From assembly GCF_009834535.1 (NCBI RefSeq), contig NC_045705.1:40920001-40984000 (forward strand): DNA of 64,000 nt. The letters are read 5' to 3'. Source of the DNA: Camelus ferus. Taxonomy: Eukaryota. Position numbers and translations under genes: made by a program. Position 1 is the stretch's first letter; each line of letters starts with the position of its first letter. Below, one piece after another: positions 17,601-64,000 of this stretch. The notes beneath the pieces are model-generated. The model was not told the DNA's origin, did no database searches, and was given only the letters and a program-made list of their open reading frames with translations.

Positions 17601-17746
17601 TCATTTGGAAATCTTGGCGATCAACAGCATTCTGAGAGGCAGGGTTGCTTCAATCCAAGTGTTGGGGGAATTTACCATCTTTTCCCAGAGAGCAACTTCC
17701 TCTGGAGTGGAGTCCATCCAATCCACTTCAGTACCATAGCTTTTAC
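17601..17746 (-). CDS. SYTL2: SYTL2 terminal coding exon, (G)[47 protein letters not shown]
   Basis: Acceptor ttcccag. The TGA stop is at 17603-17601. Confidence 0.96.
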
Positions 17747-32700: not shown

Positions 32701-35700
32701 ATACAAGGCATAAGCTGAAAACACACTTTTCTTTCATCTATGAACAGAGATGTTTTTGTAAAATGGTTAAAGGTACAGTAGTTCACATGCACAGGACCAT
32801 AAGGTAGGCAACATGCAGTTTTCATAAACTATACAGAGAAAACAAGAAGGAGTTGAACCAAATAGAAAAACAAAAATTTAAAAACCATTAGTTTTGACTG
32901 GACTTGAGTTGGATTTGAATTATATTAAAATATACTACCAATGGGAATTGGCTTTATTTTTTCATATCAGAGCTTTGAACCACAGGATCTGCACTTTATT
33001 GGTTCATCTCCTTGAGATGTATTTTTAACATGCTGCAGGCTGAAAAACTATTTCATCAGACAGCAAGGATCTTTGTACACAACTCAGTCATAAAAGTATC
33101 CTGGCTATTGATTTGTTTAGTGATTGCTGGGATTACTTCTAAGAGTATTTCTTGACTCAGAATTATGAAAAACTACAACTTCAAAACTAATTGTGTTTTG
33201 AAAATAGAAATTACTTAGATACATGTCAACTCAAAATTTTCAACAGGGGTATCCCAAGGCCAAGTCTGAATGATTCAAGTTGATACTCTAAGAATTTAAT
33301 ATGAAAATATAGCATATGGTTTCTTTCTGATATAGTAAGTATATGTGTGGAAGTCACAATAAGATGATGAATTCTCTTCCTAATTTGTGCAACTCTAGTT
33401 AAAAAACTATTTTCTTCTTTGTCTAAGAATGACAACGTCTAAGTTTTCTTCTAGTGAATCAGAGCTTTTGTATTGAATGTGTTAATACTTTTCAAGGTAC
33501 TTAGAACACTGCCTGGCATATATTAGACCCTATATAAGTATTTGCTAAACAAACATGATAGAAAATCCTTAAGTTATCTTTTCAATGTTATATAAATATA
33601 CTGACTTTTTCACTGAAAGAGATACTAGGAAAACAAATAAAAATCAAATTACATTTCTATATATAACTCAAAAGGCTCAAATTTAGACTTTAAACATTAG
33701 CTAAAGAAATCTAATGAAGGGAAACTGAAAATTGAACTATACATATTAAATATTTGCTTATTCACATAATAGTTCTCACCTAGCTTTAGGCTCACCAATG
33801 TATCAAAATACATTTCTCGTGTCTCACGAGATGATGCCTGCTTTAATCACTTCCCATTAAACAATAACACATGTGTGTATTTGGGTGACTTATGCTGAAG
33901 CGGTATAAGGTTAGGTCCTACAAGGGCACAGTATAGTCCAATGAGCATGCAAAACATTTTTTTATCATAACACTGCTCACTATTATTGTCAAAGTATATA
34001 TCTACTACTCCAATTAGTTAGTTCTACATTTATTGGGCTTTAGTTATTTGTCTTTTGATCATGCACTTCTTTTTGTCTTGTGGTAAGAACATACTCTTCA
34101 CTAGAGAAAAGGAATAATCCCAGTCCAGGCATTAAGAGTCATCTTGGAAAATATCACAAAAAAGAGAGAAATTAATTTATCCAGAATTTAGCACATGATT
34201 AACCTATCTGCCTTGACCAGTAACTAAGCTAATCAAGAGGTCACCAATGAAGATGCATATATTAACATACATCATCTATGTCTCTGTTTTGTTTTCACTT
34301 TTCAGGCTAAATGTTGAACAAAACATAGGAAGATAAAATAAGATGCTCAAATTTAAGTGTCCAGTTGCCAGTTCAAAAGCAACTGGAGAAGCCTTTTTAC
34401 CCAATACCCCTGAGGGACAGAAGTCTTGTTTGCTCTGCAGCAGCCAGACACAAAACACACACCAAGCGCTGAAGCCTGGACTGCCTTTTTTCCTGGGTAG
34501 TTCTTAAGACCTTGTCAGGTCATGTGCCAAAGCTCAGCGCCTTCATCTCTGGCAGGAGAACCTCATGAGCAAAGTTTCAGATTTCAGATGAGATGTCACT
34601 GCCTTCAAGCATCAGCACTTATTCTCTATCTAATGGTTCATTCATTTGGCAGGCTCTTCTAAGAACCATTAGCACATCCAAAGACTGTTGGGAAACTGGT
34701 ATTAAAAATCCTGTGGACTCCTGAAGACAGGTATGTGTATCATTATCTTCATCCTTCCAGTGCCTCGGATTATGAAACTGGCTGAAACAGGGAAGCTAAG
34801 AGGACACACACTACATATCTGTATGCTCTGCTAGTACCCACAAACACTTACTTAATGCACTGTCTGTCCTCAAGACAATAGTCACAGTTAAGGATAGCAA
34901 TCTTAAGATTGAACAGAAAATAGTGAATAATCACCTTTTCTTGGTGGTGGATATTAATTAGTCGATGCACATTAGCTACCACTGTATACATACATTTCTT
35001 TCTTTTTTTAAATTAAAATATAGTTGACATACAATATTATGTTAGTTTCAGATGTACTACCCAATAATTTGACATTTGCATACATTATGAAATGATTACG
35101 ATGGAAAGTCTAGTAACCATCTGTCCCCAGTTACCACAGTATTAGTGACCATATTCCTTATGCTATATATTACATCTCCATGGCTTATTTGTTCAATAAC
35201 TGGAGGCTTGTATCTCTTAATCCCTTTCATCTATTCCCTGCCACCATGCCCACCTGACAGCCACCCTTCTGTTTTCTTTGTCTTTGAGTCTGTTTTTGTN
35301 NNNNNNNNNNNNNNNNNNNNNNNNNNNNNNNNNNNNNNNNNNNNNNNNNNNNNNNNNNNNNNNNNNNNNNNNNNNNNNNNNNNNNNNNNNNNNNNNNNNN
35401 NNNNNNNNNNNNNNNNNNNNNNNNNNNAGATTCAGATATTTACTTGCTTTATATGTTGAACATATACTATTTGAGCCTAGTTTTGAAACTCAGAGCTTAA
35501 ACCCTGGGCATTATAAAATTTGCTTCTATAGATTTGTGGAGAGGCATATACAACCATACTACATACTAATTGCCAAAGTGCAGTCCTTTCCTAGGTCCAC
35601 ATACATTATAAATTACTTCATGTCTATAGTCTTGTGTAAAGGCCATAAAAGATCCACTACTCAAGACCAGACTGCAACATAAAAGCCAAGTGATATTAGA

Positions 35701-38700
35701 AGGTGCGAACTTCATTTTAAGAAAAGACTCAAAGAGCAGAGAGACTGACAAAAGTATACTACTACTCAGCAATAATGTGTGTATATATAATCTATACTTA
35801 TACATAAAAATTAAAAAATACATAACTCTCCCTTGGTGGAATCATGAATTAACCTTTCAACACAGATAGCAGAGAAGTATTCTTAGTAAAACCCTTGTCA
35901 GAATGAAATAGTTTTGTAAGCTGCAAAACTTTAGTACAATAAAAAATGCTGGTATTAATGGGGTTAGTTATTTTAGTACATTTAACACCATGTAGAGTAT
36001 CAACATTTAGTCATTTGTGAGAAGGATCCTGCTACTCACTTCCTGGAATGCATTCATTTGTATCTGGTTCCTGATCTGCTTTTTGATCTACTCAGAAGAG
36101 CAACATTGAGAATAAATACCATTTTAACAGAAAGATTAAAGAGACATGAAAGTAAAACTCAAATGTCAGTTTCGCAAGCTAAGACTGCAGAATACATCTG
36201 ACAGGTTTTCAGCTTGCTTTCGTCCATTCCCCACTGTGACTCTTTCTTTGCCTCTTTAAGGTCTCCTCTTCAACTAAAAATCTAACACAAGCATAGGGGA
36301 TATTCAGCATCTTTTCCTCTCACTCACTGAACCATGGCATGGAGAAAGCAAGGAGCACTGGACTAGGAGTCATGCAGCCGAGATTCCAGTCCCCACCCTC
36401 CTACTGACTAACTACAGGAGCTTCAACAAAAGCACCTAATTTCTCTGAGCTTTTCTTATCTGTAAAATGATGATAAAAATCACTGCCCCACCTACTTCAA
36501 TGAGGTTGCTGTCAACGTAAAATGAGAAAGACAAAACTATTACATAAAAGTAAGGAACGACCTTTGAGGAGCTCATTGCTGCATTTTATACAGGAAAGCT
36601 TAGTTAATATACCTTTTTATTATTATAGTGCAGGCAATTTAGAAAACAAAATCCTAGCACACAAATATAAATTATATTTTGCATAAATGCTGAACCACAA
36701 AAATTAGACTCATTTCCATCCCTCCCCCCACTATTACCCTATTCATTCTGTAATTGATCAAGTAATCCCTGATCCACTGACAAGCTGCAAGACATTGTGA
36801 CTCCTTAACATTCAGAATCAGATAATTTCACCCTCAGCCTATACTTAGTTATTTACATGAGCAGAGGCAGGATCCCCACTCTTGCTCTGTGACCCTTTCC
36901 TTTGAACTTAAATTATTACCAATGATACCTAGAGACCTAAATGTTGAGACTTGAGAATCAAATACAGGAATAACCCAGGAATCCACTCCACTCTCCCTTC
37001 CTTCACAAGGAGTTCTGCAAGTCAGAGTAGCAAAAATCTGCTCATACCCACAGAAATAGAATTTCCTATTTATAGAAACCCTCGCTTCCTAAGGGTCTCT
37101 GATGAGATCCTCAAAACAGTATTACCAGCAGAAACCTTAAGAATACAAACAGTATTAAACACACCAAGTCAGAACCATTTTATAACTTAGGTACCATTCA
37201 TCACATAGTGACAAATGACGTTCTTCTATTTATCTAACAGCTGCATCCCGGTGACTGCCCAAACCACCCCAGAACCTAATACACAGACAGACATGCAAAT
37301 ACATAAAGATATTTACCATCTTCAGCACTACGTACTAATTCTTCTGGCAGATTATCTACTTTTGCTTGATCTGTGCAAGAAAAATTAACAAATGGTTAAC
37401 ACGACTGACCCTTGGCGAGAAAGAACAATGAGAGTGTCCCTGGAAGCCCCCAGAGTTGAAAGCAATTAGTCAAGATGCGGTGAGGGGTGCAACCAAGATG
37501 TCTTCCCCAAAATACTTTCTCTTTAGATTAGCTATTTGAGCCAGAGCCATAGCGGGAGCTCCCATTTCAGCCCCGATGCAGCTTACATCAGCACACTGCT
37601 GCACACGGACTCCCAAGGGTTAGAGGGTTAGCTCAGAGCAAGCAATCGGTCGGCAGCAGGAGAAAGCACGGGGCTGCTACAGCCTCTCTATTCTTCTGGA
37701 AAGGGTAAGATGCTAGCCATGACTAACACCTTCCCAAACCCATGGTCATTAACAAATATTTCTGTGCATACATCATCATTTGTGTNNNNNNNNNNNNNNN
37801 NNNNNNNNNNNNNNNNNNNNNNNNNNNNNNNNNNNNNNNNNNNNNNNNNNNNNNNNNNNNNNNNNNNNNNNNNNNNNNNNNNNNNNNNNNNNNNNNNNNN
37901 NNNNNNNNNNNNNNNNNNNNNNNNNNNNNNNNNNNNNNNNNNNNNNNNNCATTCCTGACTACTTTAAAACTGCACCATGGAAATAGCTCCATGCTTCTTA
38001 AACAAGAGGTTTGCCAAATTGGACAATTGTTGCTGGGCTTTTTTTCCCCTCCTCAGGGCCCATCACTAACATACGGAAGAACAATCAGGGCTATCCAACA
38101 AAGGATTGGACTCGCCTTCTCTGGAAGCATTCAGGCGGATGTGGGGGTTGGCCACCTGTTGAGAAGGCTTTAGAGGGAATTCCTGCATTGGGGGGAGTTT
38201 GGAATGGGTGACCTTCAAGGTTCCTTTCAACCCTGAGATTCCAAGATCTTTAGTAGGGTAAGGACTGCATTTCAAATTGGGACTACTGTCTTCAGAGCTC
38301 TGAAAATCTCTGAATTTTAGGAACTGCTTAGTGGCATGGCTTTTTCTTTTTCTTTTTCTTTTTAAATTCTGACTTTTCAGTCTCAGTTGCAGATGCATAA
38401 AAATATTCTAAACATGACAATGGTCATTTTTTAATCATATGAGTTTGGCAGGGGTTAACTTGCACTCAGTAACTTTTCTCATGACCATCTATAACCCCAG
38501 GGGTGTATCTTAGCTTAAAAATGAAAATAAAATTAAAAAAAACCCTAGAAGTCATAATTTCTAAGTCTGTTTGTCTGGTTCACAGGTCCTTGTATACATT
38601 ATGCTTTACGTCAGAAGAAACCCATCACTGATTAAAGCAGCAACCGCTGCGGAATAGAGTGCCTGAAGTGTTGCATGACAGGTAGTCTTTGGGCTTTTAG

Positions 38701-41700
38701 TTCCACTGATCAAAAGAAATGTGTGAAAATAAAGGATAAAAGAGAAAGCAAAGACCTTGAGGCCAAGCACTAATTCATCTCCATGTCATGCAAAACTCAT
38801 CAGACATCCAACACTGTTATATTTAACACGGTCACTTCATGAACGCTCTTGATAATAGCTGTTGATAAACGCTGTTGATTTTGAGTCTCAGCTCTGCTGT
38901 ATGACACGAAGCAAATTGCTTTACCTCTCTGAACTTCACTTTCCTCATCTGTAAAATGGGGATAACAATTCGTCCCTCATATGGTTGCTTATGTCAGTTA
39001 AATGAGGTAATTCATGTAAAACGCTTAGCCAAGTCTTGGCACATGGTGCTCCATCAATGGTAGCTATTATTACTAGACCCACTAGCTACTACAGTCTTAA
39101 AACTCACTATCCTTGAATAAACAGATTGGGATTCTTCAATTCAAAGAAATCTAGTGTTCTAGTAACCAAAAGTAACGCATTATTTTAAAAGAAAAGTTTC
39201 TAGGGTAAGTCTCTTCAGCTCACTCAGGAAAAGTTATTCTCATCTGTTAACCACCCCTTTAGGGGTTCCAGTGCACACAGCATGCAGTGAGGCCACAGAA
39301 GAGCACATAAGCATTTTTAAGCTTAGATGGGCGCATNNNNNNNNNNNNNNNNNNNNNNNNNNNNNNNNNNNNNNNNNNNNNNNNNNNNNNNNNNNNNNNN
39401 NNNNNNNNNNNNNNNNNNNNNNNNNNNNNNNNNNNNNNNNNNNNNNNNNNNNNNNNNNNNNNNNNNNNNNNNNNNNNNNNNNNNATGAATACTGCACAAT
39501 ACAAAATTAAAAAAACAAAACCCAATCAAATTCTTAATAACCAGTGGGTATTGAAATGGTAGATTGAAAGGAGGCACTAAGCCATAAGCCACTGTATTTT
39601 TATTTACTCTATGAAGTACTCCACAGAAGCAAATAAAATTTCTCCACTATTAGTATGTCCTTAAAAAAGTAACTTTCCTGGTCAAGAAACAGTTTTAAGT
39701 ATAAATGATACAGAAACAAGATTACCACATTAATTGAAATGTGATTTCTTAAGTCCTCTACACCTCTATTTTAGGCATGATTTGTTCTGTGCTGGACTTT
39801 GAATCTTTCCCCTTCACACTTCAGCTTTTGAAGACAGCCACAAAATGGTTTTAGAAGCATTAAAATAATTAGCTGAGAACCACAGAAGGCAGGATTCAGA
39901 TGTTTTAACATCTGTGTATAATCGGGTACACAGATGGGTGAATTCTCCAGATCAACAAATGTAGGCTTTTTGGGTTTCATGATCTGGTAAAATTTCCAAC
40001 AAAATGTTGACTATATGAGGTAGTCAACTTTTTATTTTACTTAAGTATTTTAAGGCATGGGGGGTGAGGGACATAGGGTGGGGAACTCCCTTTCCTTTTA
40101 TAAAAGGGAAGTCATTTTAGGACCACAAAGGAAAAAAGGAAAAGAAAAAGGGCACAACCACAGAATAAGAACAGTTCTTCAAATTAAATACATCTAATGT
40201 TTAAAAAAAAATCTCTCTAGAAAGTTCTTAATTTTTCCATTTTGACAGTGAAAACCCCGTCATGGACAAGCCCTCGTCTGAGTACTGTCATTCATCATTG
40301 TATTCTCAGTGCCTAGAACTGTGGCTGGCAATAGGCACTTCAAAAATAGTTGCTAAATCAGTGAATGATTCTATTAATGAGGCAATGAATTTGGGAACCA
40401 CTTCTCTAGATAATACTTTCCTGAAATGCATCCCAGTTTTGCCCAATGTTATTAGGCATTCTACAGTAAATGGATTCTAGGATGAATTAGATTTGGGATG
40501 CTCCGTGTTCAAAATTTAAAAGGTTTCTTACTACAGACCTTCTCAGTGACTTTAATATGCTTTAATACACTAATTACGTGCATTATCTCCCAGCATTCCC
40601 TCCTCTTTTTTAAAAAGAACATATCGAGGTATTGGTTAGTCACGAGCTCAGCCACAAGTCAAACATGTCAGGCTGCTCACCAAAACTATGGTGCCGTTGT
40701 TGTCAGGTTCTTCCCTATTCTCACTCCACCCCCACCCATTTATTTAAAAAATAATTTAGGTTAGAGGATATAAAATGTGACTGTACCGTTTTATACCTCC
40801 TACCTGGCTTAGAATTTAAAAATAACTTCTCTGGGCTCTGTCTGGGTGCTTATTTGATTATTTCAGTTCCAGATAGGCTTTGTGCTGTTCAGTGCTTTAA
40901 CACAGCTATGCACATTAAGCCATAGTCTCCAAAGTAAGTGCAAATTTTCAAGCTTTTCACTTCCTATGGGTCAATTTACCCTAGTAACTCACAAGGTAGC
41001 TTAGTAAAGGGCTACTTCAAGTTTAACATGCTGACTTATACTCTTGCCTGGTTTCAGAGACTGGAATTTCACTGCCGTTTCCTCACCAGTAACTAATGCT
41101 AAGGGGGCTTCAGCTTGATTAATTAGGATTAAAGGTATATTCTTTGGTTAGTGTTCAAGAGGCCCTACAGCTACTTGCAAAGGAATCCAAACCTCACAAG
41201 TCAGCCACTCAGTAAAGCTCATTTGTTTTCACTGACACTCAAGGGAGCTAGACAGTGACAAATTCTATTAATTTCCTACTAAGGAAGGTGATCAACACTA
41301 GTTGCTGTGCAACTTCGATTAAAATGTTCCAGCCAGAGAGCATCGTTTATCATTTTATCACCCTAATCAGGTAACTTCCTATTTGTTCCTGGATTTCTCT
41401 CCTAAAATACCCATGTTGATCAGAACAGCAAACTGAGACAAGCCCTGTGTTTTATAGCTTGGCTGAAACCAGTCCCTCCAAGTCCACTTAGATGAATGCA
41501 GTCATCGATTAAGATCTTCCTCCATTTAGCTAAGGCTAGAGCCAAAGAAATGCAGCAGGCCAGGCAATGGCCTTAGGTGGAATCAGGTGAAGTCATCTGA
41601 CTGAGTCATACTTTAAAAGGGGAATATTCAACAGATAATTGAAAGAGAGAGGGAGAGAGTGGGAATGAAAACACCACAGCACAAGGAATCTGAGGGAAAG

Positions 41701-44700
41701 TTCCAGTCTTGCACTTGGTTCCTGGTACTTAGCCATGACTATCGTAAAAATATTGCTCCTAAAAGGGAAATATGTGCCCATTTGTGCCACTTTCTTGTCA
41801 CAAATTTTACTAGAGACTTCTGTATGGACTGCCAATTAAGAAATTCTAAGTATTTCCAAAAGGAATGCTAGCTTGAATGTTTCAGAGTTACTCTCTAAAC
41901 CCTCAAAGTTCTTTTTAAAATATTTCTGAAATCTAAAAATTTTATTGTTGATTAGTGAGAATAAAGTCAGATTCTGAAACACTGTCTTATGGGTAAAGCT
42001 ATCTCAATGTAACACATCTGATTAAAGAATATAAAAGGAAATGTAATTTTTTAATTAAGAGAAGATAGGGAGAAGTAAAGTACAAAGAAGAATTTGGCAC
42101 CATTTGGGATTGTCAAATTAATCCCAACTTTAAAAACTATATCATCCTTTACGTCAGCATCACATAAATCAACTCATTAACCAAATGGGTTAAAAACTTC
42201 AAAATGCTCACTGGAAGAATCTCTCCAGCTTTCTGCATAAGAACCGATGTTCCCATCTGAAAAGTCGGAGTCAGAAAAACCTTCGTTTTCTTCCTTTTTC
42301 TCTTGTCTCTTACATGACGATGCCAAAATCAATTCAACTTTACTTGTTTTTGTAAAGTTTTCTTTGTTTGCTGGGAGAGGAATGGGTTGCATATTTCTGG
42401 GTACATTAATTGCCTCAGGAGCCTCTTTGAAGCCAGGCTCCTGGAAAGACCCTTCTGGAACTGCTGCAACCTCGCTTTCACTGTCCCTGTCCCCTGGGGG
42501 TTTTATAGTTTCAAAGGTCCCTACTTCATGGTCCACAGGAAGTGGTGAGGTCCCAGGGATCTCAACCCCACTTTCAGAACCACAGAGATCTACTGATAAA
42601 TCAGTCACAGCTTTGCCTCTTCTCAACACTTTATCACGTTGGTTGACCTGAGATTTGAAAATATTCCTCTTAAGCGTCATTTCAGAGGCCTCTGAGGCTG
42701 TCCAGTAAAGGGGGGGCGCTTTCCCCAAGAACCTGGCCTGCTTTGACTGTGAAGGCTCCTTCCCAGGAGCTCCTTCCTTTGCTGACACTTGGAGCTGATA
42801 GCAAGAACCGTTAGACATTTCTTTAAGGAGTTTCTCAAAACCAGTATCAAAAGCACTCTCAGTTACTGATGGAGCCTCAGACTTTTTTATTGTTTCTTTT
42901 ATTTCCTTAGGATGGAACTCAGAAGCAGCTTGCCTGGGCACCATCGTACTACCTATTAACCTTGCTGAATAGAGAGTCCCTGTATCGCTGTCGTATTTTG
43001 TACAGGAGGTTCCGACTGTTTCCTTCAGTAGTTTTTCTAAGCCAGCATTGAATTCAAGGAGCTCTGATTTAGGCTGAATAATAGTTTCCCTCACAATTTC
43101 TGTCACTTCCTTAGGTAACACTTTGCCATCCTGAGCAACAGTAGAACCAGATGAGCTAAGGGTTTGTTCTGATGGAGACATATGGGCAGCTAAGTAAGAT
43201 CCAACCTCATGAGTTTCATCAGGAACTACACTGGAAGAATAAAAATCCTTTCTGCCTGGAACTATGAACTCCATTGTAGCCCGTGGTGAGACAACTCCCA
43301 GAGAATTCTGGGGGTTACCTGCTACCCACACTCCTTCAGGAAATTCTGCTTTTACTTTTCCAGAAACTGCTTCCTTCCCAACTGGATAACTCAACAAAGC
43401 TTCTCTAAGTAGCTTCTGTAATACAGCATTTACATCATTCAATGCAGGTTTGGGTGGAAGAGTAACTTTTTCTATAGTCTCTGAGATTTCCCTTGGAGAA
43501 GGCAGTGCCTTATCCTGAGGAGCAAGATGAGCATCTCTGGAAGAAGGCATATCTTGAGGACAGTTGGCCATATCCCCCCAAAAACCCTTCCTGTGACGAT
43601 CGGAAGGCTGATCTAATAGGTGAGAACCTTCTGCAGCCATCTGAGATGAGCTCTCCGTGTTTAGCTGGCACTCACCACTTTGAGCTTCCTGGGAGAGAGC
43701 AGTATTTCCCAAAGTTTCTCCCCTCTCTGGAAAAGGAGCTATTATCTCTCTCTGATAGGCTGATGTGTTCTGACTCTGTTCTATCCCTTTTTCAAAAACT
43801 CTACTCTCTACAGACTCAGAGTTGATGCTAGTGGTAATGGGTTCACACTTGGTTTGCAAGGGAGAAGGTGGATTTCCAGTTGCTTCCTTCAGGAGTTTGT
43901 CTAGACTAGTAGTCAGAGGGTTCAGATTGACCTTTGGAGGAGCTACTGTTTTGTCTACATGCTCATTAATGATCTCCTTAGGTCTTTTGGCTTCTTTCTC
44001 AGTATTGGTAAAATCTGTTTTTTGAGGCCATGTCGTATTTTCAGAAACACCTGGTTCAAGTACTTGTTTTTCATGAAATTTTCCACCAGGAGGCTGGATT
44101 ACTGGTGATGCAGCTTCTGCAAGCAGCTTCTGTAAGCTGTCGTTAAACGTGTCTTTGTAGTCTTTAGACAAAACGGTTGTTTTCACTATGGATTCTTGGA
44201 TCTCTTGATCAGAGTAATCCTTTTCTTCCTTGAACGCTGGAGTAACAAACCATTCCGTATTTTTCCCCATGTTTTTCTTTGATGACTCATTTCCTGGCAA
44301 CTGATGAGTGAACTTTCTGGGTGGTCTCAGTGGAAATGTGGTTTCATCTGGTAACACCTGGAGTGTGCCCTCTGAATTTAATTTCTCTATTTCCTCTCTT
44401 GCCGGAACTTTTTTCTGGCTTAGAAGCATCTCTCTTTCATGGGTATTTTTCCCTGATGATTTACTATCACTGAAGTCTTTGTGTTTCTGGCTATTAAAAG
44501 GCACAGAATTTATTTGGCTTGTTGTGGTAGTTTTCTTCTCAATATTATCTTGATTGTTTGGATTGGCCTCTAAGTCCCAAAACTTTCTCAAATTCTCAAA
44601 TTGAGAGTGATTATAGACCTGTTCTGTACTGGGCTCATCCATTCTTTCTTTTAGGGACATAACTTTAAAGCTGGGGTTTGATTCACCAACTAGAGGTCTG

Positions 44701-47700
44701 TTTTCCTCCAGAGGAGTATGTATTTCACTCCCAACGTTTGAAGGATGTCGCAGTGGCAGTGAAGAAATGTCCTTTTCAGAACGTAAACTCTCTGTCACTG
44801 GTAATCTTTTTACAGGCTCAGTTGTCTTATTCTGAAACAGAGACACTTTAACTGACTGGTCAGCTGAAAGGTAATTTTTGGATGGACCTGATGTTTGGGG
44901 CCTGGTCTCTTTCGGTGTATTTGAGGAATAAAAACTGGAGAGATGGGCTACTTGGCCATCCTTATCTAGGACCACTTGTTTGACAGTGATTTGATTATTG
45001 TGTTTACTATGGCCAGTAGATAAACTGTCCATGGACGTCACAGGCTGACAGGCTTTAGCAGAAGGTCGTTCCTGACTGAATGAAGTTGTGGGTTCTTTAT
45101 GAGTCAACTTAGTAGCAGCTTTCTCACCTTCCCAAAAGGATATTCTGTCACTCACTCGTTTGTATTTCTCCCTTTGCACTTGGCTCTCGGGAACCTCACC
45201 AGCCTCTTGTAGTTGGACCTCAGGCTTCTTCCAAGGAGATCTGTTGTTGGCAGCACCAGGTGATGGCTCAGTATCCTCTGGTTCTAGAGAAGCTTTTAGA
45301 AGGTAAGTATCTCTTCCTTTGCACTCTCCCTCTGCCTTCATGCTGTCTTTCAAACTCAGTTCTCTGACAATCGTTGAAGAGTCAAAATTCACTTCTGATT
45401 TTCCTCTATTTTTTTCATAAACGTGAAGCTCAGGCTCTGCTTCACCTAAGCTGCCAACACCCTTAACATTGCATGGAACGTGGTCTTCTGCATCAGATCC
45501 TTTGCGAATGCTGTAGGAATAGCTATTGGTTGGAGGAAGTACCTCAATTCCTTCTCCTATGTTTTTTGAAACTTGGCTGTAGTCCACAGTTTTATTCTCT
45601 TGATTTGGGCTGTAGATTTCAAATGGTTGCAATATGCCTGGGCTTTCCTTGCCTTGTGGGGACAAGTGAATAGATTTGGGCTTGATATTCACAGTACCAT
45701 CTCGGCAATTTCCAGAAGGCAGCATATTTTCCTCAACCTGGAACATTGAATCAGATCCTATAGGTGTCAACTCAACTTTGGTGGAAAACAGAGCCTTTGA
45801 GCCATTTTCTTTTTGACTGGTATCATCCATCACCAAGGCAAGAGCAATCCGTGCCTCTGAGTCTGTTTTTTCTCTGGACTCTGTTCCTCGAGGATGTTGG
45901 AGAGATACCTCACTGCCATCTGAATGAGAACTTCGGTTAAACCAGTCTAGGACTTTAGATATGGAATCATCAGTTGTCTTCCTTATCTCAGTGGCATATG
46001 GACCAGAGCATGAAGACGTCTTAGCTCTCAGGGCCTTACCTTGCTGATGGTCTTTAGAACTGCAATCTGGCACCTGAGATGGCTCAGGCTCAACGTGAGA
46101 CAGTTCATCTGTAACACAGAAATGCTTTTCTAAATAAGAAAAGACAATGCTTAAAGAATTATTATTCAGTCACTCACATTTTCTTTTAAAGAGGCACTTT
46201 GTACTTAATACTTTTCACACAGTAGCTGTTTCCATCAGCATTTATCAGGAGTTATAATGTAAGCCATCCTAATTAAGATATTCTATCAAAGATGCTCTAC
46301 AACAATAAAGAAAGGTAAACACAGACAGACCCATGGAAGTAGGGGGTATAGGGAGAATTGGGAAATTTCTTTCAAGTCTCTGTTTTATTTTTAAAATTCA
46401 TGTGAATTTTGTATTCTGATCCACATTACATTTTAAGTATTAGTTTTCTCCTAGTCGCAAATCTTTGCATGTAACGGACACTCCAATAAGATACACCACA
46501 TTGATTTTATGACACCACCTATCCACTGGCACATCCATAAACCCTAGACAGGGCTTATGCTCAGGTTTGAGAAACACAGACTTAGATTTCAGGAGTCGGA
46601 AAAACAACTTTTAGGGAAAATGAAACAAGGAGTTCCCTCCAGAACATCAGAATGGCACAGTGAGGATATCTGCATTCCTGGGCCTTACTCCTGATATACT
46701 GAACCAGAATCTCTGAAGATGGGGCCTAGGAACCTTTCCTCCCAGCCATCCAGTGATTGCTTTGCTTACTGGGGCTTGAGGACCATGGTCTAAGAGGCTC
46801 CTCCACCATCCCCTACTTCCCTCCTACAGGTTTTAAGTTGGAGGTTGTTTTTGTGAGACAAAGTAAAATGAGGACTGATGGAGAATGTGATTTCTACCTG
46901 CCCCCTGATGTTTTCTAATCAATAGCTAGGAGGTTGAGAAGGATATTTAAGTTCTCTCTAAGCTGTGAAGAAAGCAGGGAGAGCCCTTGCTGGGCCCTGA
47001 TCACAGGGCGTGTGGTACGTGCAGGTGAGGGTGCTCAGGCTTTCTTTCCCTTTAGTTAAGACGCGGGTGTTTCAGCATTTCTTCCTCTTCCTGCTCAGCT
47101 GTAAGCTACACAATACAGGTTCCTGAAAATCATATGAGCTGAATTCTTACGAAATTCAGTTACATTTCAAATACACCAGAGGAGGTATCAGTTAATAAAA
47201 TTCTCTCTTTAATTTTAATCAGTCAACTCTGGCTAAATGTGAAAACAGTCTTATACAATAATTGGCATATAGTGGATACTGGTTTCCTTTCTGAATTATA
47301 CATTATATTATTAAATATATGCCAATAATGGTAAAGTTCCTTTGAGAAATCTTTAAGTATTCTTTAACTGTTAGTCTGTTTAACAAAAGACTAATGATGT
47401 GGGGGGGGGGGGGAAATGCTTGTAACATACTGTTAGCCAAGAAAGAAGTCTGGACAGTTAAAGCATAATTTTAAATTATATCCATACCTGAAAATTATTG
47501 AAAGGCCCTACAATGACATGTTGGCAATAGTTAATGCTGGGTGATGACATCACAGACGATAACTGTTTTATTCTGTGTGCATTTCTTTTCAAATGTTTTT
47601 ATACTTTTCAAAAGATTATGTATATTACTTTAAAAATAGAGTTTTTTAAAAATTCAATGCCAGGATGTTTTGTTTCCTTTGAGGAATCCTTTTGTTTTGT

Positions 47701-50700
47701 TTTCCTCTAGTATAATAATGAGTGTGATATTGATTGTCCTGAAACTCAGAGCTAGTCAAAGTCTTATAATTCACACAACTAGAGTTTACTATTTTTTGGT
47801 CCTGACTTTCTTTTTATGTTCCATTATTTACTTGCATATATTTTTGTGGTAAGCAGGGTATTAATGAGTAAGCAGAACTTAGTTTATAAGCTCTGAGGCC
47901 AGAAGGCTTATCTGTCAATCAAAATGGATTTAGCTGGGGTTTTCTTCCCAAATTTCATGGTAAGTTGGGATTTAAAAATCACAAATAAATAGTTGATACA
48001 AAATTATAAAGGTAGTCAGTCAGAAAGCAGGTGGAAAAACAGAAAAGGTTTACCAATTTTTTTCTATGGATTATAACAAATGAAAATATTACCATGGAAA
48101 TTTTTTTCATCTTTTGGATAAACATTTAAGCAAGCATCATCCAGTTAAGTGCTAGTGTTGACTCAAACTTTAGTAATTTCCTTAAAATGAGTTACTTTAT
48201 ATCTTGAAGAACCACCTGCTAATTTTTAATTAAAAAATATTTTGTTCTGTTCAAAAGATTTAAAATGTCCAGGGGGAGGGGTGTTGGAAATGCTTTGTCC
48301 TTTAAGAAGTGGATTGATCTGAACAAGCATGAAACTGTAGGGCTGGGCAAAAGTGACTAAGGGTCAACTTAATACTGCCTGATAAGGGAGGGGGAGAGCA
48401 AATGATTTAGTAACTTAACTGTTGCTATTGTAAATTTTCCTGACTATAAAAATTATCATAGGGTTGGATTAAGACTTAGTGAAGATGGGAGAGAGTATAC
48501 AAAACAATTTTTCCCATTTTTTTTTAAACATAAGAATTATGAAGTAAATTGTGTAGGTATGAGAAAGTGGTTTGAAGCATCTTCTGAGAGTTTTAAGATC
48601 TTTAAGAGAAGGCTAGGTAGCAGGTTAGCAGGAAAAAGCAGTGCTCTCACTGCCTCTCAACTCATACCAGCTGAAGGAGAAAGTTCCTTCAGAGCATTTA
48701 AAGTCTAGGAACAAATGGATGGAGGCCCTGGGCAGGCCAAAGTATGAAGCTTTTTAATAGTAAGCATTTAAAGTCCAGTTTTCCATCCTTTGAAGCTAGA
48801 GTGAAGCTTCTCCTGAAATTAAAAGAGAAACCAAAGTTTGGTTAAATGGTAATTGATAAATTTGCATTAGGTGAATAATAATATATTTACTCTGTACAAA
48901 GGTATCAGTGTATGTTTAATGCTCACTCTGTATGTACACCTTGATTTAACTTAAAGGACTATAATTTGTTTAGTTAAATAATTGATAAAATCACATTTTT
49001 CAGGATTAAGCATACTGGACCAGAAACTGTAGTATTTTTGTTCTTTTAGTTATTGGGGATTGAGAAAAACCTCCAAACCCATTAAGTGGTATAAACATTC
49101 CCCAGCGGCATCTGCCTGAATTTTAGCTGGAATACCCAGAAGGCAAAAAGAGGCTTCTTATCAGGCTGCTTGGCTGGCCTGGCCATCCCAAGCTCACTGG
49201 GTCAGTTTTGTAGCCTGGTAGTGACAGATCTCTTACCAGCAGGGCTCTGAGACAATTCTGATTCAAGGCTTGACAATTCTGATGAGTTAGCTTTCTGTTC
49301 ATCGATGGTGTGTGAATTCTCAGTGGACTGTGGTCTTGCAGATAAAACTTCCTTGGGAGAATCGTGCTCATTAATTGGAAAAGAGTCAGAAGTCGTTGGC
49401 TGATGTGTTTCAGTTTTTGATGTACTTGGGCTTGAGGCTGATGGCTGAAAAGGCAAAGGCTTTCTGTATTGGGAAGGCTTAGGGTCATTCCAAAAGTCAT
49501 CTAGGTCACCTGCATCTTCTGCTCCATTCTTCAACCTGTCAGATTCTAAAACACTGAATTCTCCCACTTCCCGGCCATGGATGAGTCCAGGACTCTGTGG
49601 GAGTTCATCCTTTACTGCAGAGAATCTCACGTGTTTTAATGGCTCCAGTGAGTTTGAGGAAGAGTCATCTTCTAGCAAATGCTCATGCTCCTTCTCAGAA
49701 ATTCTCTCGTGGATAGTTAGGACAGGAGACACAATCTTGCTTTTGGGTTCAAAGTTTTGATGAAAACGAACAGTTTCTGAGTCTGTGCTACTGGAACTGG
49801 AATTGCGTTTCAGGATCCCTCTTGGAGCCCCACCTCTGTTCAGGGAGTCTGCCCTTTGTCTAGGAAGAGACTGGTTATCATCCCGCTTTAAATCATGTGA
49901 TTTGTAGATCATTTTCCTGGCTTTGGGGATTGGAGGCTTGATTTGGGACCCATTCTCAGGACCTGGAAAAGTCTGCTTTGGTTTCTCTAACTTTTGGCTT
50001 GAAATGTTTGGGAGAGATGATTTTTCTTTTGATTCTGACAACTCACCTGAAAATTAAAACATATTAGATGATATACAAAATGAAGAGTAACGCTATAATT
50101 TAAAACGTCTATCATAGATAGACAATCTACATTTAGCAAAAGCACTAAAACATTAAAGACAATAAGGCATGTAGCATTAGTGCAGCATTAGTTCATGCAT
50201 GAACTTCACTGAACTGTACATGTAAGATTGCTGTGCTTTACATACATACTTTGTGGTATTTTCTACTCAATAACAAAATTTTTTTAAACAATTTAAAAAA
50301 ATTCCTCAAGGAGGGTAAAGGAAAAACACAAGTCACTTTAAAAAAATTCATGCATGGAAACCAGAAAATGGGAGCTCAATTTTTTAAAAAGGAAATCTTA
50401 ATACTTAAAACAAAAATTACTTTTGTCAAAAAGATAAAAAAAAAAAAGAAAAACAGGTAACATGTTCCAGTGACTTTTTCCTGTAAAATACTTTATGCTA
50501 TGTAAATTGTATACAATGCAGAGGAAAAATATACTAATATTAAAACAGGCTAATTGAAATTCTTAACTCTACTGTTTGTTAATTTTCTACCCTTTGCCCA
50601 ATCTTTAATGTTTGTGGAATCTTCTTACAGTTGTTTTTGAAGAGATTAAATTGTCTAATACTTCTTCTTAGTGGTGTGCAAGAATGGTAAAATTCCGTAA

Positions 50701-53700
50701 GAGGCAGACTTCAATCAATTAAGCCACAAACCTGATAAAATGCTTCTGAGACGCTGGGCTGATAATTACAGATTAGAGGATTGTAACATTGTCTAGTGGA
50801 TTTTTTTTTTCTTGAGGCAAACTCTTTGAATTTTAAATAGAGAACTGTGTCTGTACATGGTACATATCCAATAAGTACTACTAAGTGAATGATGGAATGC
50901 CTCAGGTCAAAAATTTTCCCAGTTCACTGAGGGGAACCCAAGGCACGGAGGTCACACAAGTGTCAGCTCCAAGACTGGAATGCATGAACTTCCAGTTTCT
51001 AAAATTTCTGCTTCCTTCCCTCAGGCAGGAAACCAATGGGCATAGGAGAAGAATAAGAAAACCATCAGGACTTTTCACTTTCTCTTGAAAGCTATTTTAG
51101 TTACAGGAACTCTGAGAATTTCCCCTAATCCATAGATAACAAAGATAAAAATATCTAGCCCATAAAAATAATATTTACCCTCTTTTGAAGTCTGAAAGAA
51201 ACCAGCCCTTCCATTTTCTGACTGTTCATTTTTGGTTTGTTGAGATAAGTGATCTTCTGGCAACATGGAGCTATTAAACGGATTCCTCCTTTGCTGGGGA
51301 AAAATATTGTTTATTAAATTCACCTTAAATGTCAAAACAGCAACTCAGTGTCAGCAAATGCTTATTATCTCCTATATTTGATAATTTTATCCAGTAAATT
51401 CTATCTGGAATGTTTGAAAAATGATTTTCTTAGTTAATCTGGTTAGCATAGAATTACCAATACATGCCATATCAGAAAAAAATCAAAACAACTGTAAAAA
51501 TATACTCCATTTCAGAGTCCTACAAAGTTAAACCAGAACCAAGCATTCCAATCTAACTCTCACAGAGGTGAGAAAACTTGAGCCTGAACATATCAAACAG
51601 CTGGTCAAGGTTAGGGTAAACCTGAGACTCTAACCAGGGCAGATTCCCACCAGTGCTCTTTCTACTGCATGAGACTCACTCCAATAGATGTTAAAGCTGT
51701 ACTAAATATAATTGTAATTGATCTTTCCTATAAGGATTTAAAAGACACATATCAAGGTATTGAAGCACTTCATAGTCACTATTATGATCACCCATTCTAA
51801 TAATAGACAGGGTATCAGTAAATAGAATTTTTTATTAACATAAGACTGTATATCAATGCTTACTCTCTGTAGTTTCATAAACTGACAGTTCCCTCCCACA
51901 GCAGACCTCTGACAGAGATTCAGGAAGCCATGAATAGGAATTAGGACTGACATGGAACTAATAAGCCACATTCCATATGCTTAAAAAAGGCAGCTCCCAA
52001 AAGCTTCAGACTTTTTATTCTTTAGGGCAAAAAATCTAGGTCTTCAGCAATGCAGTATCATGGTATTCATAAAATTTTCCACCACAAGAGTGATCTCTTA
52101 TATTAAATTGTAAAAATTATCCGTATTTGGTAGGAAAAAAAAAGTACTACAAAATCCTCTTTACTTCATGGTGCTTTGATAAAAAGAGAAAAATGGCATT
52201 CCTGCCCCAAATGAGACTTTCAAAGTCTGAGCTCAATCTACCTTGACTGGAGATGCAGCTGACTTCCTTGTGTCTTCCTGGGATGTATCAATCATGATGG
52301 AAGCTGGATTTACCACACTGGAACTGCAAACGAAACAGAAATTCAGAAAATAAAAACTCACCCTTGGAGGAAGCATAAATCATGCCTCTGAAGCCAAAAG
52401 CTATTAAGGCAGGATAGGAGAGGAAGTCTGTAAAATCAAACTGTCAGGAAGGGAGAGGGAGTGCGAACCTAGAGATGATTAAGCAGCAGAGCAAAGGCAA
52501 TGGTAGAACAGAAATGAAAGACAGGCATGAGACAAGACAAAGCCATCCATGAGAAGCCTTGATGCTTGTATCATGGTACCAGGCACACAGGAGGTTCGCA
52601 ATTTAAATTTGTAGAAATAAACCTGCCTCAAAGTCGGAAGCTAACAGCAGGTGCAGACTAGAAAGCGAGCAGTTGGTTTCAAGGAGGGAACGTCCCTGCT
52701 GAAATAAGGTCCCAGAGCATTTTAGAGATTCCATAGACCAGGGCCAGAATGGCAGTGCTTACTCTAACTCAGGTAGAAAAAAGGTGAAGAAAAGACTCAG
52801 GTGAGACAAGCGATTTGAATATGGAACAGAGGAAACAGCAGATCTAAGAGCTGCTTTGCCAGGAGAATGGCGAATGGGGACAACTTCCTGGGAACTCTCA
52901 ACCCAACTCTCCAGGCTGGCCAGGTGAGTTCCTGTTCAAATACAAGAGGACAAGCAGAGCATCCAGAAGACAGGGGGAGGTTAGAAGCCAGGAGCTGGCT
53001 TAGAGGAGTGAGGATTCTCTAAGGGCGGCCCTAGGGTGAGAGCATGGGGAGGGTGAGTAGAAAAATGTGAGTTGAGCCGGCTCCCTCCTGAACAACCACT
53101 CCCCTGGCCATTGAGTAAGAAGAGGAAACGAGGGCCCTCGAGAAAGAGGAAAATCACCTGCTCGGACTTCCTGTTCCAGTGGCCTTGCCTCAGGCATAAG
53201 ACGCGAAGTCACTATTGGCTGAAAGCACTGTGCCTGGTTAAACTCCACTAGTTCTCCTTACGGCATCAGAGTCAAGAACTTGGAAAAATACCTCGGAGAG
53301 AACTGGCTTTTCACCACTCGGCTAAGGAACTGGAGGTCGGGAAGGGGAGCACTTCGCCCGAAGGCCTCAGAGCCTTGCCCCAGACTATTGTCAGCAAAAT
53401 CGTGGGCTAGATGTTCCTGCAGCTTCATTTCCTTTCCTGCCCTCAGAACCTCAATTGTTATTTTTGTACAGAGTTAGTCCCAAGAACAGGCTGAACACTT
53501 GAGGAAGCCATGTTTCCTTCTGTTAGCCTCCTCACTGTTCCAGAAGGATTACCTCAACTCCAGCCAAGGCAAAAGGAGAAGAGGCAGATGTGTATCAAAT
53601 ACTGCCTGATCACCGGATGTGAGAAAGAGGGGAAAAAAGGATGGGGAAGGGAAGGGCAGGGAACAAGAGTAGGAGCTTATAATGGAGCCAGAATTAAGGC

Positions 53701-63033: not shown

Positions 63034-64000
63034 CTGAAACAGGAAACAGTAAAGACAAGAAGGTTATCTATCTTTCACCTCCATGACCTACAGCTCTCAT
63101 ACTGGCTCTTATCATTGAAGGCTGGAAACCTGAACTCCAGGCCTTCCCTGAGTGCCCAGGCAGTCTCTCAGGTGTCTGGGGACCTGGGGTCAGAATTACA
63201 TCTACAGAAGTCAGTCGCTTCCTATGATGTTTTCTCCCTACAAGTCAAGTCTCAGGAGAGCGAGGGCGTAATTTTCAATGTGCAGGTAACTCCAGAGATG
63301 ATTAAAGCAAACTTCTGACAGTCTCAAGGTGAATCTGACCCGAATTGGGGTCAGGACTGACTGTGTATGGCCAGGGGATGCTCAGGGAAGGGAGTCGTCA
63401 TTGGGATGGAAGCACCATCATTACCAAGTATTTACTCAACAGCTATGATGTGTCCTAACTTGAGGCTGGGTTTTGGAATACAAAGGGGAAAAAAAAATGC
63501 TTCTGTTCTGAAAGGTTCCTCTTCACTGCCTCTTCATCCTCCTCCCCCAATCTCCACACATCCAACTTTCACATTTTCCTCAATAGCCAGCTCAGATGCC
63601 AGGGTTCCCAGAAAACCTCTGTGATCCTTCTTCAGGAAATAACATCTTTTGCCTTTAAACACCCAGGGCCTTTTACCTGCACTTCTCAGATAAATAGCAT
63701 CAACTGAGTGATGACTGAGCACCCAACACAGTGCTGAGTCCTTTGCAGGCATTATCCTATGAGGAGGGAACTATTTTCCAAGTTTACAGATTTGGAAATT
63801 GAGGATCAAAGGGTTCAAGAAACTTGCCTAAGGCCACAAAGCCAGTAAGTGACAGAAATAACTTTCATCAGTGTTAAGAAGGTGAAGCAAAATAAAGGCT
63901 CCCAATTTCCAAATACTCATATCCACGGGTCTCTTTACACATAAGTCTAGTTTCTTCAGCTGCAAAATGAGGTCCACAGAACTAACTTGTACCCTTCAGA

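What the first reader, a model, noticed from the sequence alone, without database searches (positions are those of the whole stretch)
42816..44204. Five cryptic ~31-aa repeats ending in LxxLL/LD-like helices inside the giant SYTL2 exon
Seen in the sequence: the giant-exon ORF contains five spaced, alignable units. R1 [31 protein letters not shown] (44204-44112); R2 [32 protein letters not shown] (43976-43881); R3 [31 protein letters not shown] (43490-43398); R4 [31 protein letters not shown] (43109-43017); R5 [30 protein letters not shown] (42905-42816). The consensus is roughly EI.E.I.K...P.K.....F...L.KLL.E, and the linkers between units are unrelated. Established: LxxLL (NR box) and paxillin LD motifs (LDxLLxxL) are short amphipathic helices that dock onto helical-bundle partners. 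Inference: only the long isoform would carry this multivalent docking array, placed between the Rab27-binding SHD and the membrane-binding C2 domains. It could act as a splice-switched scaffold. I know of no named domain for it, but I have not searched.
Basis: partly seen in the sequence, partly recalled or inferred. Interest (0 to 1): 0.75.

Follow-up and report, generated by a model that had tools for sequence, protein, structure and literature searches.

The report
Ancient helical repeat array in SYTL2
The five repeats are real: they are what remains of an old, previously unnamed tandem repeat found only in the giant optional exon of the vesicle-docking protein SYTL2, kept by selection from lungfish to mammals and probably serving as several binding sites for a partner nobody has identified.

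Summary
Observation confirmed and extended. The window holds a camelid SYTL2 gene.

- Self-comparison scores beat every shuffle, and each unit is recovered by a profile built without it.
- The units are more conserved than their linkers: identity 0.70-0.82 against 0.58, and dN/dS about 0.37 against 0.68 at similar dS.
- A profile search of 1.84 billion proteins found the repeat essentially only in SYTL2 of tetrapods and lungfish. I detected 1-17 copies per protein at E<=0.01 (up to 21 at a looser cut). Spacing is usually 58-85 aa, and ducks and pigeons carry fresh 65-aa tandem copies.
- AlphaFold predicts disorder everywhere except at the units. The robust element is an amphipathic helix, FxxGLxKLLKEASE, preceded by E[VI]xET[VI]EK and P[PS]K.

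The helices are real, but membership in the LD-motif or NR-box classes fails. Canonical LD matches 0 of 221 units, and LxxLL is kept in only 38%.

Pfam, the PDB and the searchable literature have nothing on this repeat. Its function is inferred, not shown: most likely multivalent docking of an unknown partner between the Rab27-binding SHD and the C2 domains of the long isoform.

The parts
42212..46108 (-). Giant cassette exon of SYTL2. It is 3897 nt (1299 codons), phase 1-1, and encodes P0001 residues about 470-1769.
   Evidence: tblastn of P0001 against the window. Acceptor and donor read. Open frame. No Pfam domain.
44100..44225 (-). Repeat unit R1, extended ([42 protein letters not shown]).
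   Evidence: (15.4 bits when left out). AF2 predicts helix-break-helix. Identity across 29 placentals is 0.82.
43866..43994 (-). Repeat unit R2, extended.
   Evidence: (19.5 bits). AF2 predicts the C-terminal helix only. Identity is 0.70. The unit is degenerate or lost in Tasmanian devil and shortened in guinea pig and naked mole-rat.
43383..43508 (-). Repeat unit R3, extended.
   Evidence: (23.7 bits). AF2 predicts the C-terminal helix, with block pLDDT peaking at 74. Identity is 0.78.
43002..43124 (-). Repeat unit R4, extended.
   Evidence: (27.2 bits). The single-unit AF2 model has pLDDT 81.9 with a helix over [21 protein letters not shown]. Identity is 0.82.
42804..42923 (-). Repeat unit R5, extended. 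Its helix starts GFEKLL, so it is not a strict LxxLL.
   Evidence: (8.5 bits, still above all 500 shuffles). AF2 predicts helix-break-helix. Identity is 0.77.
45903..45995 (-). Conserved motif W1 ([15 protein letters not shown]) in the same exon. It is the most conserved stretch of the exon.
   Evidence: Identity 0.95 in placentals. Recovered from marsupial, lizard, alligator, pigeon, newt, frogs and lungfish, but not from the caecilian or the duck protein tested.
45102..45194 (-). Conserved motif W2 ([14 protein letters not shown]).
   Evidence: Identity 0.94. The SFWE core recurs in caecilian, newt, birds and lungfish.
44553..44645 (-). Conserved motif W3 ([11 protein letters not shown]).
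   Evidence: Identity 0.91. Found as SNPSQFQSLRNFWD in birds, reptiles, amphibians and lungfish.
17604..63115 (-). SYTL2 gene body present in the window. It holds the exons for P0001 residues 75-2216: the end of the SHD upstream of the giant exon and the two C2 domains downstream.
   Evidence: tblastn exon map. Pfam FYVE_2 and C2 on P0001.

Best explanation
Shown:
- The five units are homologous copies of a roughly 40-residue repeat that is specific to SYTL2.
- Each unit has two conserved halves. The first is acidic and rich in beta-branched residues, (P)(Q/K)E[VI]xE(T)[VI](E)K[TS](V)(A). A P[PS]K turn follows. The second half is an amphipathic helix, FxxGL[EQ]KLLKEA(S)(E).
- The units sit in a disordered, net-acidic 1299-residue cassette exon between the Rab27-binding SHD and the two C2 domains.
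- They descend from an ancient tandem array with a period of about 60-85 aa. It is present in lungfish and all tetrapod groups sampled, and its copy number varies between lineages.
- In mammals five copies survive under purifying selection while the linkers drift.

Inferred:
- Each unit is a folding-upon-binding recognition element.
- The array gives the long Slp2 isoform several equivalent docking sites for one partner that has not been identified.
- That would add avidity or scaffolding to a long, flexible Rab27-vesicle-to-plasma-membrane tether.
- Skipping the exon would remove this capacity without changing the frame.
For: - Repeat reality: self-scan against shuffles, leave-one-out HMMs, exactly five copies.
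- Constraint in 29 placentals: unit identity 0.70-0.82 against 0.58 for linkers, which puts the units at the 78th-97th percentile of all 31-aa windows.
- Constraint at codon level: in 15 of 15 pairwise comparisons unit dN/dS (0.26-0.46, mean 0.37) is below linker dN/dS (0.42-0.89, mean 0.68). Mean dS is similar (0.35 against 0.37), so selection acts on the protein.
- Phyletic range: the profile search of 1.84e9 proteins gave 53 hits. All but one (a weak hit to a bacterial kinase) are SYTL2 or SYTL2 fragments. The 29 clusters that carry a source name are all tetrapods or lungfish.
- Copy number: 1-17 units per protein at domain E<=0.01 and 21 in P0123 at E<=0.1.
- Spacing between units clusters at 58-85 aa.
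- Camel units match Tasmanian devil units one to one. The match to alligator units is weaker but colinear.
- Structure: AF2 on 496 aa gives mean pLDDT 41, with helices only at the five units. A single-unit model built on a 65-unit alignment gives pLDDT 81.9 with a 21-residue C-terminal helix.
- Most conserved positions in the 65-unit alignment: E13, K17, F30, L34, K36, L37 and E40, at 77-98%.
- Isoform logic: the exon is 3897 nt and phase 1-1. Full-length intron-less transcripts carry SHD, exon and C2. RNA runs hold 98-100% of the exon's sampled words.
Against: - No partner is known or predicted. No tool here could test binding.
- Profile search of the PDB, Foldseek against the PDB and the ESM Atlas gave nothing.
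- The N-terminal half of the unit is modelled inconsistently: a low-confidence helix when modelled in context, non-helical in the single-unit model.
- The units may therefore pack on themselves or on each other rather than on a partner.
- Unit dN/dS of about 0.37 is moderate constraint, not strong.
- R2 is dispensable in several mammals.
- I have no direct read-level evidence for exon use in camel tissues, because the one read-laying run failed.
Confidence: 0.55

Rival explanations
1. The units are intramolecular or homotypic 'stickers'. The amphipathic helix packs against the unit's own N-terminal half or against other units. This would tune compaction, tether length or clustering of the long isoform and would need no external partner.
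For: - Both halves of the unit are conserved together.
- The single-unit AF2 model gives pLDDT about 82 to the non-helical N-terminal half as well, which suggests it is placed relative to the helix.
- Copy number is very plastic, from 1 to about 20, as expected if valency rather than unit identity matters.
- Hydrophobic stripes sit at i, i+4, i+8 in the first half and at i, i+4, i+7, i+8 in the second.
Against: - AF2 on the 496-aa region gives pTM 0.15, so no confident packing between units.
- One-to-one conservation of individual units between camel and marsupial suggests each unit keeps its own identity.
- The charged positions E13, K17, K36 and E40 are near-invariant. That fits a specific interface at least as well as generic stickiness.
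Confidence: 0.2
2. One reading: the C-terminal helices are true paxillin-type LD motifs or NR-box LxxLL motifs. They would dock onto FAT, vinculin-tail or parvin bundles, or onto nuclear-receptor ligand-binding domains.
For: - Four of the five camel units contain LxxLL, against 0.43 expected by chance in the exon.
- L0, an acidic or Q residue at +1, L+3 and L+4 resemble the first five LD positions.
- E at +6 is 97% conserved, and an inverse LD class with D/E at +6 exists (PMC7703752).
- The helices are amphipathic.
Against: - Canonical LD pattern 0 of 221 units, relaxed LD 3 of 221, LxxLL 84 of 221.
- LD position +7 is A/T/S instead of Leu.
- Position +1 is acidic in only about half the units.
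- The second Leu of the LL pair is 63% conserved, and camel R5 starts with Phe.
- The equally conserved N-terminal half has no counterpart in LD or NR motifs.
- By established knowledge SYTL2 is a cytoplasmic, membrane-associated Rab27 effector, not a nuclear coactivator.
Confidence: 0.06
3. The conservation reflects RNA-level signals, such as splicing enhancers needed to define a 3.9-kb exon, or mere compositional bias. On this reading it is not a protein function.
For: - Very long internal exons need extra definition signals (general knowledge).
- The exon is rich in E, K, S, T and P.
Against: - Synonymous divergence in the units equals that in the linkers (mean dS 0.35 against 0.37), while dN is halved (0.12 against 0.25).
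- The amino-acid pattern is kept across about 400 My although DNA similarity between units has almost vanished.
- Shuffles that preserve composition never reach the observed scores.
Confidence: 0.03
4. The helices are membrane-binding amphipathic helices that add lipid contacts to the C2 domains.
For: The helices have a moderate hydrophobic moment, 0.31-0.50.
Against: - Helix net charge is 0 to -2 and mean hydrophobicity is about 0.
- The exon has a net charge of -35, which is unfavourable for acidic inner-leaflet lipids.
- The conserved E40 and the EASE tail add further negative charge.
Confidence: 0.04

Closest known systems
Paxillin-family LD motif arrays (LDxLLxxL; 4-5 copies in a disordered N-terminal region)
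   Same: Several short amphipathic helices are spaced by unrelated disordered linkers in a scaffold protein. The units share the L-[D/E/Q]-x-L-L start, and the helix forms in isolation in models.
   Different: - The defining L+7 is absent (A/T/S).
- Position +1 is acidic in only about half the units.
- Canonical LD matches 0 of 221 units.
- Each unit carries a second conserved half (E[VI]xET[VI]EK-P[PS]K), so it is about 40 aa rather than 8-10.
- The family is confined to SYTL2.
- The proteome-wide LD screen does not mention SYTL2 in its main text (PMC7703752).
NR-box (LxxLL) arrays of p160 nuclear-receptor coactivators
   Same: The units are repeated LxxLL-like helices in a disordered region, and four camel units match the regular expression.
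   Different: - LxxLL is kept in only 38% of units across orthologues.
- The conserved K36, E40 and F30 are not NR-box features.
- The protein context is a cytoplasmic Rab27 effector.
Modular linkers of other Rab27 effectors. Examples from general knowledge, not tested here: the melanophilin helices that bind myosin-Va, and the Slp4-a/granuphilin linker that binds the SNARE machinery (PMC7857503 abstract)
   Same: These proteins share the N-terminal SHD architecture. In each, a disordered central region carries short partner-binding elements and determines what the Rab27 vesicle is coupled to.
   Different: - The profile finds no sequence relationship; no paralogue appears among the 53 hits.
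- SYTL2 repeats one element 5-20 times, whereas those linkers carry single, different motifs.
- The SYTL2 array sits in an optional exon.
Classical Slp2-a (910-950 aa), as studied in melanocytes, CTL and epithelia
   Same: It is the same gene, with the same SHD and C2A/C2B domains (PMC2329822).
   Different: By length the studied isoforms lack the 1299-residue exon (2216 - 1299 = 917). The repeat array and the W motifs have therefore not been examined in the papers I could search.

Membership tests
Paxillin-type LD motif | Core consensus L0-[D/E]+1-x-L+3-L+4-x-x-L+7 | tested here: not met
   0 of 221 units match L[DE].LL..L, and 3 of 221 match a relaxed version. Position +7 is A 60%, T 18%, S 9%.
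Paxillin-type LD motif | Acidic residue at +1 that pairs with basic residues beside the hydrophobic groove | tested here: inconclusive
   Position +1 is E 45%, D 6% and Q 38%, so it is acidic in only about half the units.
Paxillin-type LD motif | Forms an amphipathic helix in a disordered region | tested here: met
   AF2 predicts helices only at the units. Hydrophobic moment is 0.31-0.50.
Paxillin-type LD motif | Binds an LD-binding domain (FAT, GIT, parvin CH2, talin R8, vinculin tail) | not testable with these tools
   No multimer prediction or binding assay was available.
NR box (LxxLL) | All three leucines of LxxLL present and conserved | tested here: not met
   LxxLL occurs in 84 of 221 units (38%). 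The third Leu is 63% conserved. Camel R5 reads FEKLL.
NR box (LxxLL) | Nuclear coactivator or corepressor context that contacts the AF-2 groove of nuclear receptors | not tested
   By established knowledge SYTL2 is a Rab27 effector at vesicles and the plasma membrane.
Synaptotagmin-like protein (Slp) family, SYTL2 orthologue | N-terminal Slp homology domain plus tandem C-terminal C2 domains; orthology to annotated SYTL2 | tested here: met
   P0001 carries PF02318 (28.3 bits, cut-off 27.2) and two C2 stretches (134 bits). It is 99% identical to C. dromedarius SYTL2 X2. The exon map lies in the window.
SYTL2 giant-exon repeat (unnamed; defined here) | About 40-aa unit E[VI]xE.[VI].K...P.K......F...L.KL..E, detectable by a profile built without that unit | tested here: met
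   Leave-one-out scores are 8.5-27.2 bits against 6.0 or less in shuffles. 221 units were found in 48 proteins, essentially all SYTL2 or SYTL2 fragments.
Any curated Pfam family or solved structure | Significant profile match | tested here: not met
   Pfam gave 0 families for the exon even at E<=10, and only C2 and FYVE_2 on the full protein. The PDB profile search returned only chance matches at 19.6 bits or less. Foldseek against the PDB returned 0 matches.

The most novel reading that the evidence does not exclude
The unit would be a new class of bipartite linear motif: an extended acidic segment plus an amphipathic helix, with its own dedicated binding domain. Together with the three deeply conserved W/F motifs upstream, the array would make the giant exon a sarcopterygian-specific vesicle-tethering or scaffolding module more than 400 My old. 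That module would recruit several copies of an unidentified partner to Rab27 vesicles, a function invisible in all work on the 900-aa Slp2-a isoform.
Probability: 0.35. Interest if true: 0.7.

Novelty: new variant of a known kind. Interest (0 to 1): 0.5.

Why it matters
SYTL2/Slp2-a is a well-studied Rab27 effector in melanosome, lytic-granule, mucus and apical-membrane trafficking. Nearly all of that work uses the isoform of about 900 aa, which lacks this exon.

The exon more than doubles the protein. I show that it is not featureless linker. It contains an unnamed repeat family and three W/F motifs, maintained since at least the common ancestor of lungfish and tetrapods.

This gives precise handles for finding what the long isoform binds and where it is used:
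- the residues to mutate (E13, K17, F30, L34, K36, L37, E40);
- five defined peptides;
- a frame-neutral exon that can be deleted.

Proteome-wide motif screens that use canonical isoforms would probably miss this array, because by length the classical isoforms lack the exon.

Tried and rejected
- Pfam on the exon and on the full protein gave nothing in the exon.
- The profile search against PDB sequences gave only chance hits to designed PPR proteins.
- Foldseek of the single-unit model against the PDB gave no match.
- The ESM Atlas feature search gave scores of 0.54 or less, all uninformative. An earlier Atlas call failed on length.
- Tandem Repeats Finder found no DNA array.
There is therefore no read-level evidence.
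- Five literature searches covered repeats in the Slp2-a linker, a long SYTL2 isoform, large or giant exons, splicing, and KIAA1597. None found a description of this exon or repeat.
- The earlier-findings look-up returned only an unrelated CCDC89 note.
- From memory and by eye I compared the unit with other motif classes and rejected each because a key position does not fit the column frequencies. These were WH2/thymosin LKKT, MDM2-type FxxxWxxL, FFAT, LIR, the acidic dileucine signal, the clathrin box, B56 LxxIxE, MIM1, BH3, NES and AKAP helices. They are recalled consensus patterns, not tool tests.
- The first translation was in the wrong frame and was redone.
Full report
**1. What is at the coordinates**

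They lie in one long open frame.

tblastn with the best database match, Camelus dromedarius SYTL2 isoform X2 (P0001, 2216 aa, 99% identical), maps residues 75-2216 onto minus-strand exons between 63115 and 17604. One block, 46109-42210, covers residues 470-1769.

The sequence shows a polypyrimidine tract and ttacAG|AT at the 5' end of this block, and CA|GTGAGC at its 3' end. The exon is therefore 46108-42212, or 3897 nt. That is 1299 codons in phase 1-1, so skipping it keeps the reading frame.

P0001 has an N-terminal FYVE_2/SHD match and two C2 domains. No Pfam family matches the exon.

**2. Are the repeats more than chance?**

Yes, on three independent tests.
- I scanned the exon against itself with 30-aa ungapped BLOSUM62 windows. 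The nine best off-diagonal pairs all join two of the five units, with top scores of 68, 64, 56 and 51. In 200 shuffles the maximum averaged 39 +/- 4 and never exceeded 52.
- I built HMMs from four unit classes, each taken from 30 placental sequences. They find the omitted fifth class in the camel protein at 15.4, 19.5, 23.7, 27.2 and 8.5 bits. No domain in 500 shuffled proteins exceeds 6.0 bits.
- The complete HMM finds exactly five copies and no cryptic sixth.

At DNA level only short remnants of 19-30 nt at 80-88% identity remain, over the helix codons and the unit starts. There is no tandem DNA array. The duplications are therefore old.

**3. Are the repeats more conserved than the linkers?**

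Yes.

In an alignment of 29 placental orthologues the units are 0.70-0.82 identical to camel. The linkers between them are 0.58 identical and the whole exon 0.63. The units rank at the 78th-97th percentile of all 31-aa windows.

For codon-level rates I used six orthologous coding sequences: the window plus five Logan contigs, L001-L005. Unit dN/dS is 0.26-0.46 (mean 0.37) and linker dN/dS is 0.42-0.89 (mean 0.68). The unit value is lower in all 15 pairs. Mean dS is about equal (0.35 against 0.37), while mean dN is halved (0.12 against 0.25). The constraint therefore acts on the amino acids, not on the RNA.

**4. Where else does the repeat occur?**

I searched a 42-position profile of 58 units (A1) against 1.84 billion representative proteins. 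It gave 53 hits at E<=0.001.

Local comparison shows that all but two of the 48 new hits align to parts of camel SYTL2. Of those two, one is named SYTL2 by its source. The other is a weak, low-complexity hit to a bacterial kinase. The remaining hits are placental sequences already found.

I looked up 30 clusters, and 29 carry a source name. Apart from the kinase, all are tetrapods or a lungfish:
- a marsupial;
- duck and pigeon;
- alligator;
- lizards and a snake;
- a caecilian;
- salamanders;
- many frogs;
- the lungfish Protopterus.

No ray-finned or cartilaginous fish appeared.

Copy number differs widely at domain E<=0.01: 5 in camel and lungfish, 4 in Tasmanian devil, 7 in a caecilian and a lizard, 8 in alligator, 11 in duck, and 17 in an unnamed 3697-aa protein. 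At the looser E<=0.1 that last protein shows 21.

Start-to-start spacing clusters at 58-85 aa. Duck and pigeon carry near-identical 65-aa tandem copies, linkers included, so the array was amplified recently in birds. Camel spacings are 76, 162, 127 and 68 aa. Two of these look like double periods, which suggests lost units.

Camel units match Tasmanian devil units one to one (R1, R3, R4, R5; R2 is degenerate there). They line up weakly but colinearly with alligator units.

The camel's 'five cryptic units with unrelated linkers' are thus the eroded remains of an ancestral tandem array.

**5. Anatomy of the unit**

These are the column frequencies over 65 units from all groups (A3):

- First half: P, Q, E 82%, [VI] 95%, x, E 98%, T 51%, [VI] 96%, E 49%, K 80%, [TS] 72%, then two aliphatic positions (V/I/A and A/V/I/L).
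- Turn: P 69%, [PS] 75%, K 71%.
- Spacer: about six variable residues.
- Helix: F 77% (+L 15%), x, x, G 46%, L 89%, [EQ] 83%, K 92%, L 98%, L 63%, K 55%, E 97%, A 60%, S 55%, E 54%.

AlphaFold2 on P0001:1085-1580 with 19 orthologues gives mean pLDDT 41. The only secondary structure falls on the five units. It is helix-break-helix in R1, R4 and R5, and the C-terminal helix alone in R2 and R3. Block pLDDT peaks at 71-74 on the C-terminal helices of R1, R3 and R5 and at about 61-63 for R2 and R4.

A single unit modelled with the 65-unit alignment reaches pLDDT 81.9. It has a 21-residue C-terminal helix and a non-helical N-terminal half.

The helix hydrophobic moment is 0.31-0.50 with net charge 0 to -2. 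The exon has a net charge of -35 and is 55% P/E/S/T/K/Q/G.

**6. LD motif or NR box?**

The helices are real, but class membership fails. Among 221 units from 48 proteins:
- the canonical LD pattern L[DE]xLLxxL occurs 0 times;
- a relaxed LD pattern occurs 3 times;
- LxxLL occurs in 38%;
- [LFVM]x[KR][LI]xxE occurs in 73%;
- [FL]xxx[LF]xxL occurs in 84%.

The LD +7 leucine is replaced by A/T/S. Position +1 is acidic in only about half the units. The second leucine of the LL pair is 63% conserved. Camel R5 begins with Phe.

The LD-motif definition and the features tested come from PMC7703752. That paper does not mention SYTL2 in its main text.

The conserved N-terminal half of the unit has no counterpart in either class.

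**7. Isoform context**

2216 - 1299 = 917 aa, close to the 950-aa mouse Slp2-a used in the experimental literature (PMC2329822). The classical isoform therefore lacks this exon. This is an inference from length.

Two intron-less Logan contigs encode uninterrupted long forms containing the giant exon and the C2 domains. L001 is 7584 nt with a 2200-aa ORF, and its product also has a weak SHD/FYVE_2 match. L002 is 7377 nt with a 2077-aa ORF. Spliced long-isoform mRNA therefore exists in at least two mammals.

Camel RNA-type runs hold 98-100% of the exon's sampled words. I could not lay reads on the exon, so I do not know in which tissues it is used.

**8. Mechanism**

Shown:
- the repeat family is real;
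- it is under protein-level purifying selection;
- it is helical in models;
- its flanks are disordered;
- it is specific to SYTL2;
- it sits between the SHD and the C2 domains in an optional, frame-neutral exon.

Inferred:
- each unit is a recognition element that folds on binding;
- the array offers several equivalent sites for one unknown partner;
- this adds avidity or scaffolding to a long tether between a Rab27 vesicle and the plasma membrane.

I rate this inferred docking mechanism at about 0.55. The rivals:

| Rival | Confidence | Main reason |
|---|---|---|
| Homotypic or intramolecular stickers | 0.2 | Both halves are conserved together and copy number is plastic |
| True LD or NR motifs | 0.06 | Class membership fails (section 6) |
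| Membrane-binding helices | 0.04 | The charge is wrong |
| RNA-level constraint or composition | 0.03 | Contradicted by dS and by the shuffles |

**9. Novelty**

Pfam (copy dated 2025), PDB sequences and folds, and five full-text literature searches contain no description of this repeat or of the giant exon's content.

Arrays of helical motifs in disordered scaffold regions are a known kind of feature. This family, its bipartite unit and its phyletic pattern are new. I class it as a new variant of a known kind, of moderate interest, because it gives a concrete and testable entry to an unstudied half of a well-known trafficking protein.

Noticed in passing
window 45903-45995, 45102-45194, 44553-44645 (minus strand): Three W/F motifs are the most conserved parts of the giant exon in placentals: [15 protein letters not shown] (identity 0.95), [13 protein letters not shown] (0.94) and [11 protein letters not shown] (0.91). 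All three are recognisable in birds, reptiles, amphibians and lungfish. W2 and W3 share a phi-[KR]-x-FW-[ED] core, so they may form a second motif class. Their function is unknown.
   Followed up: partly
P0121 (duck) residues ~465-990; P0125 (pigeon) ~1204-1460: Birds carry 4-8 near-identical 65-aa tandem copies of the unit, linkers included. This indicates recent amplification or concerted evolution. Their linkers contain TPPPKPKR, a PxxPx[KR]-like (SH3-ligand-like) string that is absent from the camel linkers.
   Followed up: partly
P0123 (unnamed Logan protein, 3697 aa) and frog SYTL2 (P0141, P0146, P0151; 3163-3254 aa): Some SYTL2 proteins are much longer than the mammalian one. The frog proteins carry 4-9 units scattered over about 1.5-1.9 kaa. 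The unnamed P0123, whose species is unknown, carries 17-21 units over about 2.2 kaa.
   Followed up: no
window ~44642 (Met at P0001 959) and ~45725 (Met at P0001 598), minus strand: Several predicted primate and other mammalian isoforms of 1226-1270 aa and 1559-1602 aa start at methionines inside the giant exon. They lack the SHD but keep all five units and the C2 domains. If real, an SHD-less, Rab27-independent form also carries the array. These are gene-model predictions only.
   Followed up: partly
window ~42290-42250 (minus strand; exon aa ~1273-1287): A conserved acidic serine cluster, [15 protein letters not shown] (identity 0.81), lies near the 3' end of the exon. It looks like a casein-kinase-2-type phosphorylation cluster. 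I did not examine it.
   Followed up: no
window 142-310, 12131-12266, 29325-29496, 35300-35427, 37786-37949, 39337-39484: There are six runs of N in introns or flanks of the gene. None touches the giant exon. I left them as they are.
   Followed up: no
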